Source of the DNA: Aplysia californica
Taxonomy: Eukaryota
Assembly (NCBI RefSeq): GCF_000002075.1
Contig: NW_004797466.1
Span: 146,231-202,176 of the forward strand
DNA: 55,946 nucleotides
Direction of reading: 5' to 3'
Below, one piece after another: positions 8,793-8,821 of the stretch (within the stretch, counting starts at the first letter, position 1; each line of letters starts with the position of its first letter). A model generated the notes under the pieces. The model ran no database searches, was not told the DNA's origin, and saw nothing but the letters and a program-made list of their open reading frames with translations. The position numbers and the translations under genes are program-made.

Positions 8793-8804
8793 TTACCTTT
8801 ACCT
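8793..8804 (-). promoter_or_regulatory. Tandem AGGUAA-AGGUAA element (ZRANB2 double-finger consensus and twin 5' splice sites)
   Basis: Sense strand reads TGA atgtcgtctt AGGTAA AGGTAA cc. Confidence 0.6.
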
Positions 8805-8814
8805 AAGACGACAT

Positions 8815-8821
8815 TCAGCGC
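8815..8821 (-). CDS. ZRANB2: ZRANB2 terminal coding exon (RR-stop)
   Basis: Strong acceptor tttttctttgcag, then G CGC TGA in the right phase. Confidence 0.75.

What the first reader, a model, noticed from the sequence alone, without database searches (positions are those of the whole stretch)
8793..8821. ZRANB2 mRNA carries a perfect tandem copy of its own binding site (AGGUAA-AGGUAA) 10 nt after the stop codon: candidate autoregulatory switch
Seen: the sense strand reads ...CGC TGA atgtcgtctt AGGTAA AGGTAA cc. Established: each RanBP2-type finger of ZRANB2 binds single-stranded AGGUAA, and the two-finger protein prefers paired sites that resemble 5' splice sites. Many SR-type factors autoregulate through unproductive splicing. 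Inference: ZRANB2 binds here and controls the use of twin donors opening a 3'UTR intron, or affects 3'-end processing, forming a feedback loop. An exact 12-mer match at this position is very unlikely by chance. I do not know of this element being described in this lineage.
Basis: partly seen in the sequence, partly recalled or inferred. Interest (0 to 1): 0.8.

Follow-up and report, generated by a model that had tools for sequence, protein, structure and literature searches.

The report
ZRANB2 self-binding motifs at retained intron
The doubled binding site just after the stop codon of this sea-slug splicing-factor gene is real but absent from related animals, whereas a cluster of the same motifs at the start of the gene's sixth intron is kept across molluscs and arthropods and probably lets the protein limit its own production.

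Summary
A single-copy, 8-exon, 321-aa ZRANB2 gene lies on the minus strand; exon 8 starts at 8821, and AGGTAA-AGGTAA (8804-8793) follows the stop by 10 nt. The tandem is not conserved: none of 12 orthologous 3' ends has GGTAA within 250 nt of the stop, including a gastropod whose last exon begins with the same GCGCTGA. Used as donors, the two sites would lie 12 and 18 nt after the stop, too close to trigger NMD. My read check was uninformative. The conserved element lies upstream, at the intron-6 donor (12096-12036): AG|GTAA, which reads through as Arg-stop, then further GGTAA copies and AAGGTCAATATC. It matches another gastropod at 46 of 48 nt and recurs in bivalves and arthropods. Transcript contigs of other species retain this intron, or the last one. 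Best reading: ZRANB2 autoregulates by intron retention at intron 6, and the 3'UTR tandem is chance or a lineage-restricted helper. Binding and feedback are inferred, not shown. I found no paper describing this.

The parts
8793..8804 (-). AGGTAA-AGGTAA tandem in the 3'UTR, 10 nt after the stop and 17 nt after the exon-8 acceptor; not conserved in the orthologues examined
5545..8821 (-). Exon 8, terminal: G CGC TGA (stop 8817-8815) plus 3'UTR. The 3' end near 5545 is inferred from AATAAA at 5769 and 5568 and a GU-rich tract after it
   Evidence: the end position is inference
12036..12096 (-). Conserved intron-6 donor element: CAG|GTAA (read-through stop TAA 12092-12090), GGTAA at 12074 and 12061, AAGGTCAATATC at 12048-12037
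10107..10142 (-). Weak conserved intron-7 donor GAG|GTTTGA; read-through adds 10 residues (RFELQ...) and stops at 10109-10107
25475..25533 (-). Exon 1 coding part (ATG, first half of ZnF1)
20188..20240 (-). Exon 2 (second half of ZnF1)
16904..17009 (-). Exon 3 (linker, first half of ZnF2)
15757..15922 (-). Exon 4 (second half of ZnF2 with VNWARR; start of acidic region)
13695..13838 (-). Exon 5 (basic run and acidic region)
12094..12413 (-). Exon 6 (main RS domain)
10141..10251 (-). Exon 7 (distal RS domain)

Best explanation
The gene is an ordinary ZRANB2 orthologue whose output is probably controlled by retention of its last two introns. ZRANB2's two zinc fingers bind the cluster of GGU(AA) motifs at and just inside the intron-6 donor and, at high ZRANB2 level, hinder use of that donor (inferred). 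The retained intron puts TAA directly after the junction (shown), giving a 283-aa form that lacks the distal RS part, on an RNA expected to be detained in the nucleus or degraded by NMD (inferred). The 3'UTR tandem at 8793-8804 is not the conserved switch. It is most likely a chance or recent motif and at most an extra site in this lineage.
For: The intron-6 donor region is the only non-coding match between window 12420-3200 and any orthologous locus other than low-complexity or short weak hits: 46/48 nt with L029, E 4e-14. All 11 aligned loci keep AG|GTAA; 9 of 10 orthologues carry a further GGTAA within 45 nt, against 1 of the 6 other donors of this gene. Transcript-like contigs L023/L024 keep a 350-nt GTAA...CAG intron at this junction that the relative L020 lacks; L036 keeps and L037 splices the last intron in one bivalve. 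Of 157 fetched proteins, 27 end in SR, most at about this point (molluscs, an annelid, fishes, amphibians), and 27 carry the RF read-through of the last intron. Fifteen small contig sets of this species hold 69-76% of the words of 6450-12420, although exons make up only 47% (indirect). RNA-contacting finger residues are conserved. The tandem is absent from 12 orthologous 3' ends.
Against: No binding or feedback data exist here. GGUAA is also the U1 donor motif, so the cluster could be U1 decoys or sites for another protein; AAGGTCAATATC is unexplained. In the validated human targets ECT2 and MAST2, ZRANB2 promotes inclusion of exons whose donor overlaps the bipartite motif (PMC7049692), so the sign of the effect could be opposite. 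Retention was not measured in this species. Retained-intron contigs may be processing intermediates. The loci are related and are not independent draws.
Confidence: 0.55

Rival explanations
1. The tandem is a functional, lineage-restricted ZRANB2 site. Bound 17-28 nt downstream of the exon-8 acceptor, it tunes splicing of intron 7 (321-aa RR-stop form against the 330-aa read-through form) or mRNA fate, adding to the intron-6 cluster.
For: Perfect bipartite match with 3-nt GGU spacing; rare at this position; unique sequence; intron 7 has a weak conserved donor and is retained or spliced in other molluscs.
Against: Absent in gastropods L035 and L029 (candidate exon) and in ten more distant 3' ends. 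No close relative (other sea hares) was available. Predicted folding pairs part of it, with no significant structure (z 0.63).
Confidence: 0.25
2. One reading: the two AG|GTAA are twin donors of a 3'UTR intron whose use is controlled by ZRANB2 and lowers expression.
For: Each matches the U1 consensus at 6 of 9 positions, as well as some real donors of the gene. SC35/SRSF2 self-regulates by unproductive splicing in its 3'UTR (PMC2831310, abstract).
Against: Junctions would be 12 or 18 nt after the stop, below the 50-55 nt NMD limit; exon 8 would become a 19- or 25-nt microexon; not conserved; no junction seen, although coverage there was nil.
Confidence: 0.08
3. The intron-6 element is conserved for another regulator (U1 decoy donors, or another GGU- or AGGUCA-binding splicing factor); ZRANB2 is a target of cross-regulation rather than of itself, and the tandem is chance.
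For: The ZRANB2 motif nearly equals the donor consensus (PMC7397871); the best-kept downstream block is AAGGTCAATATC, which is not a full AGGUAA.
Against: The extra motifs are GGTAA/GGTA at variable spacing in the gene of the protein that binds exactly these; the extra sites are poor donors (5-6 of 9).
Confidence: 0.25

Closest known systems
ZRANB2 (ZIS, ZNF265) and its bipartite AGGUAA sites in targets such as ECT2 exon 5 and MAST2 exon 13 (PMC7049692)
   Same: Same protein architecture; same paired motif; in the intron-6 element the motif overlaps a 5' splice site, as in those targets.
   Different: Here the sites are in ZRANB2's own pre-mRNA. The reported effect on those targets is exon inclusion, whereas the model here needs intron retention.
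Primate ZRANB2 intron-9 retention and alternative C-termini (PMC3384923)
   Same: Last intron retained or alternatively processed, changing the C-terminus; RF-type read-through ends recur in molluscs and vertebrates.
   Different: That paper deals with the last intron, proposes PTB and a LINE-derived exon, and does not describe the GGTAA cluster at the earlier RS-exon donor or any self-regulation in the parts I read.
ARGLU1 homeostatic intron retention (PMC5389617)
   Same: Splicing-related protein with a conserved intronic element, a retained intron and a feedback loop.
   Different: ARGLU1 feedback was shown experimentally and uses a long ultraconserved element with a poison exon; here the element is about 60 nt of donor-like motifs and feedback is inferred.
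SC35/SRSF2 unproductive 3'UTR splicing (PMC2831310)
   Different: The candidate donors here are too close to the stop for NMD and are not conserved.

Membership tests
ZRANB2 orthologue | Two N-terminal RanBP2-type zinc fingers | tested here: met
   PF00641 hits on exons 2 and 4, below the cut-off because each finger is split by an intron; PDB 2k1p; first halves in exons 1 and 3
ZRANB2 orthologue | Acidic region followed by a C-terminal RS domain in one frame | tested here: met
ZRANB2 orthologue | RNA-contacting residues (W79, R81, R82, N86; R27, R28, N32) kept | tested here: met
   VNWARRxxCN in ZnF2 and VNFARRxxCN in ZnF1 (residue roles from PMC11789483)
Bipartite ZRANB2 binding site (8793-8804) | Two GGU cores 2-5 nt apart in AGGUAA context on the sense strand | tested here: met
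   3-nt spacing
Bipartite ZRANB2 binding site (8793-8804) | Single-stranded context | tested here: inconclusive
   Weak predicted pairing, z 0.63
Bipartite ZRANB2 binding site (8793-8804) | Actual binding by the protein | not testable with these tools
   needs CLIP or gel shift
Splicing-factor autoregulation by unproductive splicing: 3'UTR tandem | Element conserved in orthologues | tested here: not met
   0 of 12 orthologous 3' ends; nearest relatives are other gastropods, not other sea hares
Splicing-factor autoregulation by unproductive splicing: 3'UTR tandem | Stop more than 50-55 nt upstream of the new junction | tested here: not met
   12 or 18 nt
Splicing-factor autoregulation by unproductive splicing: intron-6 element | Own motif clustered and conserved at the regulated junction | tested here: met
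Splicing-factor autoregulation by unproductive splicing: intron-6 element | Unproductive or truncated isoform exists | tested here: inconclusive
   Seen in contigs and annotated isoforms of other species; only indirect in this species
Splicing-factor autoregulation by unproductive splicing: intron-6 element | Isoform ratio responds to the protein's own level | not testable with these tools
   needs knockdown or overexpression data

The most novel reading that the evidence does not exclude
ZRANB2 has an undescribed feedback loop, kept across bilaterian animals, in which it binds a cluster of its own donor-like motifs at the intron after the RS exon and causes retention with an immediate stop; this sea-slug lineage has added a second perfect bipartite site next to the last acceptor that takes part in the same loop.
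Probability: 0.2. Interest if true: 0.65.

Novelty: new member of a known kind. Interest (0 to 1): 0.42.

Why it matters
Self-regulation is common among splicing factors, so the kind is not new. But eight literature searches found no report of it for ZRANB2, a factor tied to drug resistance in cancer cells (PMC7049692). A 60-nt element kept from molluscs to insects, with the stop-at-junction apparently also in vertebrates, gives a defined natural target on which to test how ZRANB2 acts at 5' splice sites (competing with U1 or helping it). The tandem as originally reported matters little by itself.

Tried and rejected
Read laying on 6430-12420: the three raw-read runs had almost no depth on exons or UTR, only on interspersed repeats, and look like 3'-end libraries; the contig run I chose was DNA. 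An exact tandem in termite locus L008 lies about 170 nt inside the intron in what I recall as a common insect repeat, and the related termite locus L013 lacks it: rejected as homologous. A one-mismatch copy in L031 lies 8.9 kb past exon 7 with no acceptor and stop before it: rejected. Genomic DNA for the annotated Bradybaena, Pomacea and oyster proteins was not on record and one mollusc contig gave no DNA. The terminal exon of L030 was not located. Rfam: nothing. Repeat origin of the tandem: rejected. Loughlin 2009 was not held; its content is cited through PMC11789483. Searches went exon by exon by reference; the joined model was never sent to a search tool and was used only inside scripts for a frame check and a local score against proteins already fetched. 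The big protein search was not used. No human contig was fetched or compared; a few unnamed mammal-like proteins came back and were not looked up. N stretches were left untouched.

Full report
Observation. On the minus strand a pyrimidine tract and CAG end at 8822; the exon starts G CGC TGA, and 10 nt after the stop comes AGGTAAAGGTAA at 8804-8793. Eight exons (25533-25475, 20240-20188, 17009-16904, 15922-15757, 13838-13695, 12413-12094, 10251-10141, 8821 onward), all with GT-AG introns, give one 321-aa frame. Exon 4 matches the ZRANB2 ZnF2 structure, exons 2 and 4 give partial PF00641 hits, and the gene is single copy. The genome has 927,310,431 bases in 4332 contigs, which from memory fits the Aplysia californica assembly; the nearest named proteins are from Elysia and Bradybaena. 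The terminal exon is right: another gastropod has tgcag|GCGCTGA, a mussel-like mRNA ends AGG CGG TAG, and the Bradybaena protein ends KRSRR.

Chance. The exact 12-mer occurs 171 times in the genome, about 1e-5 for the first 100 nt after one stop. Any AGGTAA pair within 14 nt would have drawn the same remark; there are 4827 of those, which gives about 3e-4 for the first 100 nt, 1% for the 3.3-kb UTR and 5% for the gene. It is unusual, but selection after the fact from a very large scan can produce it. It is not part of a repeat.

Conservation of the tandem. I collected orthologous loci. In 12 orthologous 3' ends there is no GGTAA in the first 250 nt after the stop, and GGTAA totals 6 against 7.3 expected. 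The set includes a Pomacea-like gastropod with the identical exon start (L035) and an Elysia-like gastropod (L029), where the terminal exon is my best candidate, ag|G CAT TGA, not a proven one. No sea-hare relative was reachable, so a young functional site is not excluded.

The twin-donor idea. Both sites match the U1 consensus at 6 of 9 positions. Their junctions would lie 12 and 18 nt past the stop, under the 50-55 nt limit for NMD quoted in PMC3384923, so using them would only shorten the UTR. The read check gave no coverage there and says nothing.

What is conserved. A sensitive blastn of window 12420-3200 against all loci found one strong non-coding match: 12083-12036, 46 of 48 nt with L029, E 4e-14. 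This is the start of intron 6. All 11 aligned loci end the RS exon with TC[CA]AG|GTAA, so that read-through gives Arg-stop. Nine of ten orthologues carry one or two more GGTAA within 45 nt, against one of the six other donors of this gene. Five other mollusc-like loci share AAGGTCAATATC with the window and the termite locus has AAGGTCGATATC.

Evidence that these introns are retained. Water-flea-like contigs L023/L024 have a continuous frame up to this junction and keep a 350-nt GTAA...CAG intron that the relative L020 lacks. In one bivalve, L036 keeps and L037 splices the 1.44-kb last intron at AG|GTTTGAA. Among 157 fetched proteins, 27 end in SR, most at about this position, among them Mactra, Mytilus X3, Ruditapes X2, Candidula, Ridgeia, Xenopus, Rhinatrema X4, Latimeria X3 and several fishes; 27 carry the RF[EDG] read-through of the last intron. 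Bradybaena, Pomacea and Pecten each have annotated pairs differing at the last junction. Protein ends fit an AG|GTAA donor in vertebrates, but I saw no vertebrate DNA. For this species, 15 small contig sets from six studies hold 69-76% of the words of 6450-12420, as much as the DNA run, while exons are 47% of it. That suggests abundant intron-containing RNA, but the runs' RNA label is a guess.

Mechanism. Shown: gene structure, the stop at the intron-6 junction, the conserved motif cluster, retained forms in other species, and conserved RNA-contacting residues. Established: ZRANB2 binds paired GGU cores 2-5 nt apart (PMC11789483) and its motif is enriched at splice donors (PMC7397871). Inferred: ZRANB2 occupies the intron-6 cluster, hinders donor use, and the retained RNA is detained or degraded, or yields a 283-aa protein with a shorter RS domain. 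The direction is uncertain, since ZRANB2 promotes inclusion at motif-overlapping donors in ECT2 and MAST2 (PMC7049692). For the tandem alone my odds are about 0.65 chance, 0.25 accessory site acting on intron 7 or mRNA fate, and under 0.1 twin donors.

Known systems and novelty. It would work like ARGLU1 homeostatic retention (PMC5389617) and other splicing-factor feedback loops. Membership in that class is not established, because the response to protein level is untested. Retention of the last ZRANB2 intron is described in primates (PMC3384923). Searches for ZRANB2 self-regulation found nothing (supplements), but most subscription papers are outside the library.

Limits. The joined protein model was not searched; searches went exon by exon. 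No human contig was fetched. Verdict: the tandem is real but probably not the switch; the conserved candidate switch is 3.3 kb upstream. New member of a known kind, interest 0.42.

Noticed in passing
window 9830-9927: Intron 7 has a perfect 43-nt tandem duplication and five AATAAA on the sense strand (9917-9830); a possible intronic poly(A) site for intron-7-retaining transcripts.
   Followed up: no
window 3660-4600, 8878-9037, 11520-11667, 13328-13513: Several diverged copies of one short interspersed repeat, very abundant in the genome and in poly(A) reads; it dominated the read lay.
   Followed up: partly
L002:1344, L005:5455: Two orthologous 3'UTRs carry a perfect donor-like AGGTAAGT about 260 nt after the stop; the overall GGTAA count in UTRs is not above chance.
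   Followed up: partly
L035:15404-15450: In this gastropod a second pair of AGGTAA lies in intron 6 about 130 nt before exon 7; no counterpart in the window.
   Followed up: no
L036/L037, L030:14700-14760, L012:10370-10400: In several species the stop has moved upstream so that the last intron (AG|GTTTGA donor) lies 20-55 nt inside the 3'UTR, yet the weak donor is kept.
   Followed up: partly
window 29726-30265 and 37757-38284: Reverse transcriptase and RT-RNase H fragments of retrotransposons upstream of the gene.
   Followed up: no
   Followed up: no
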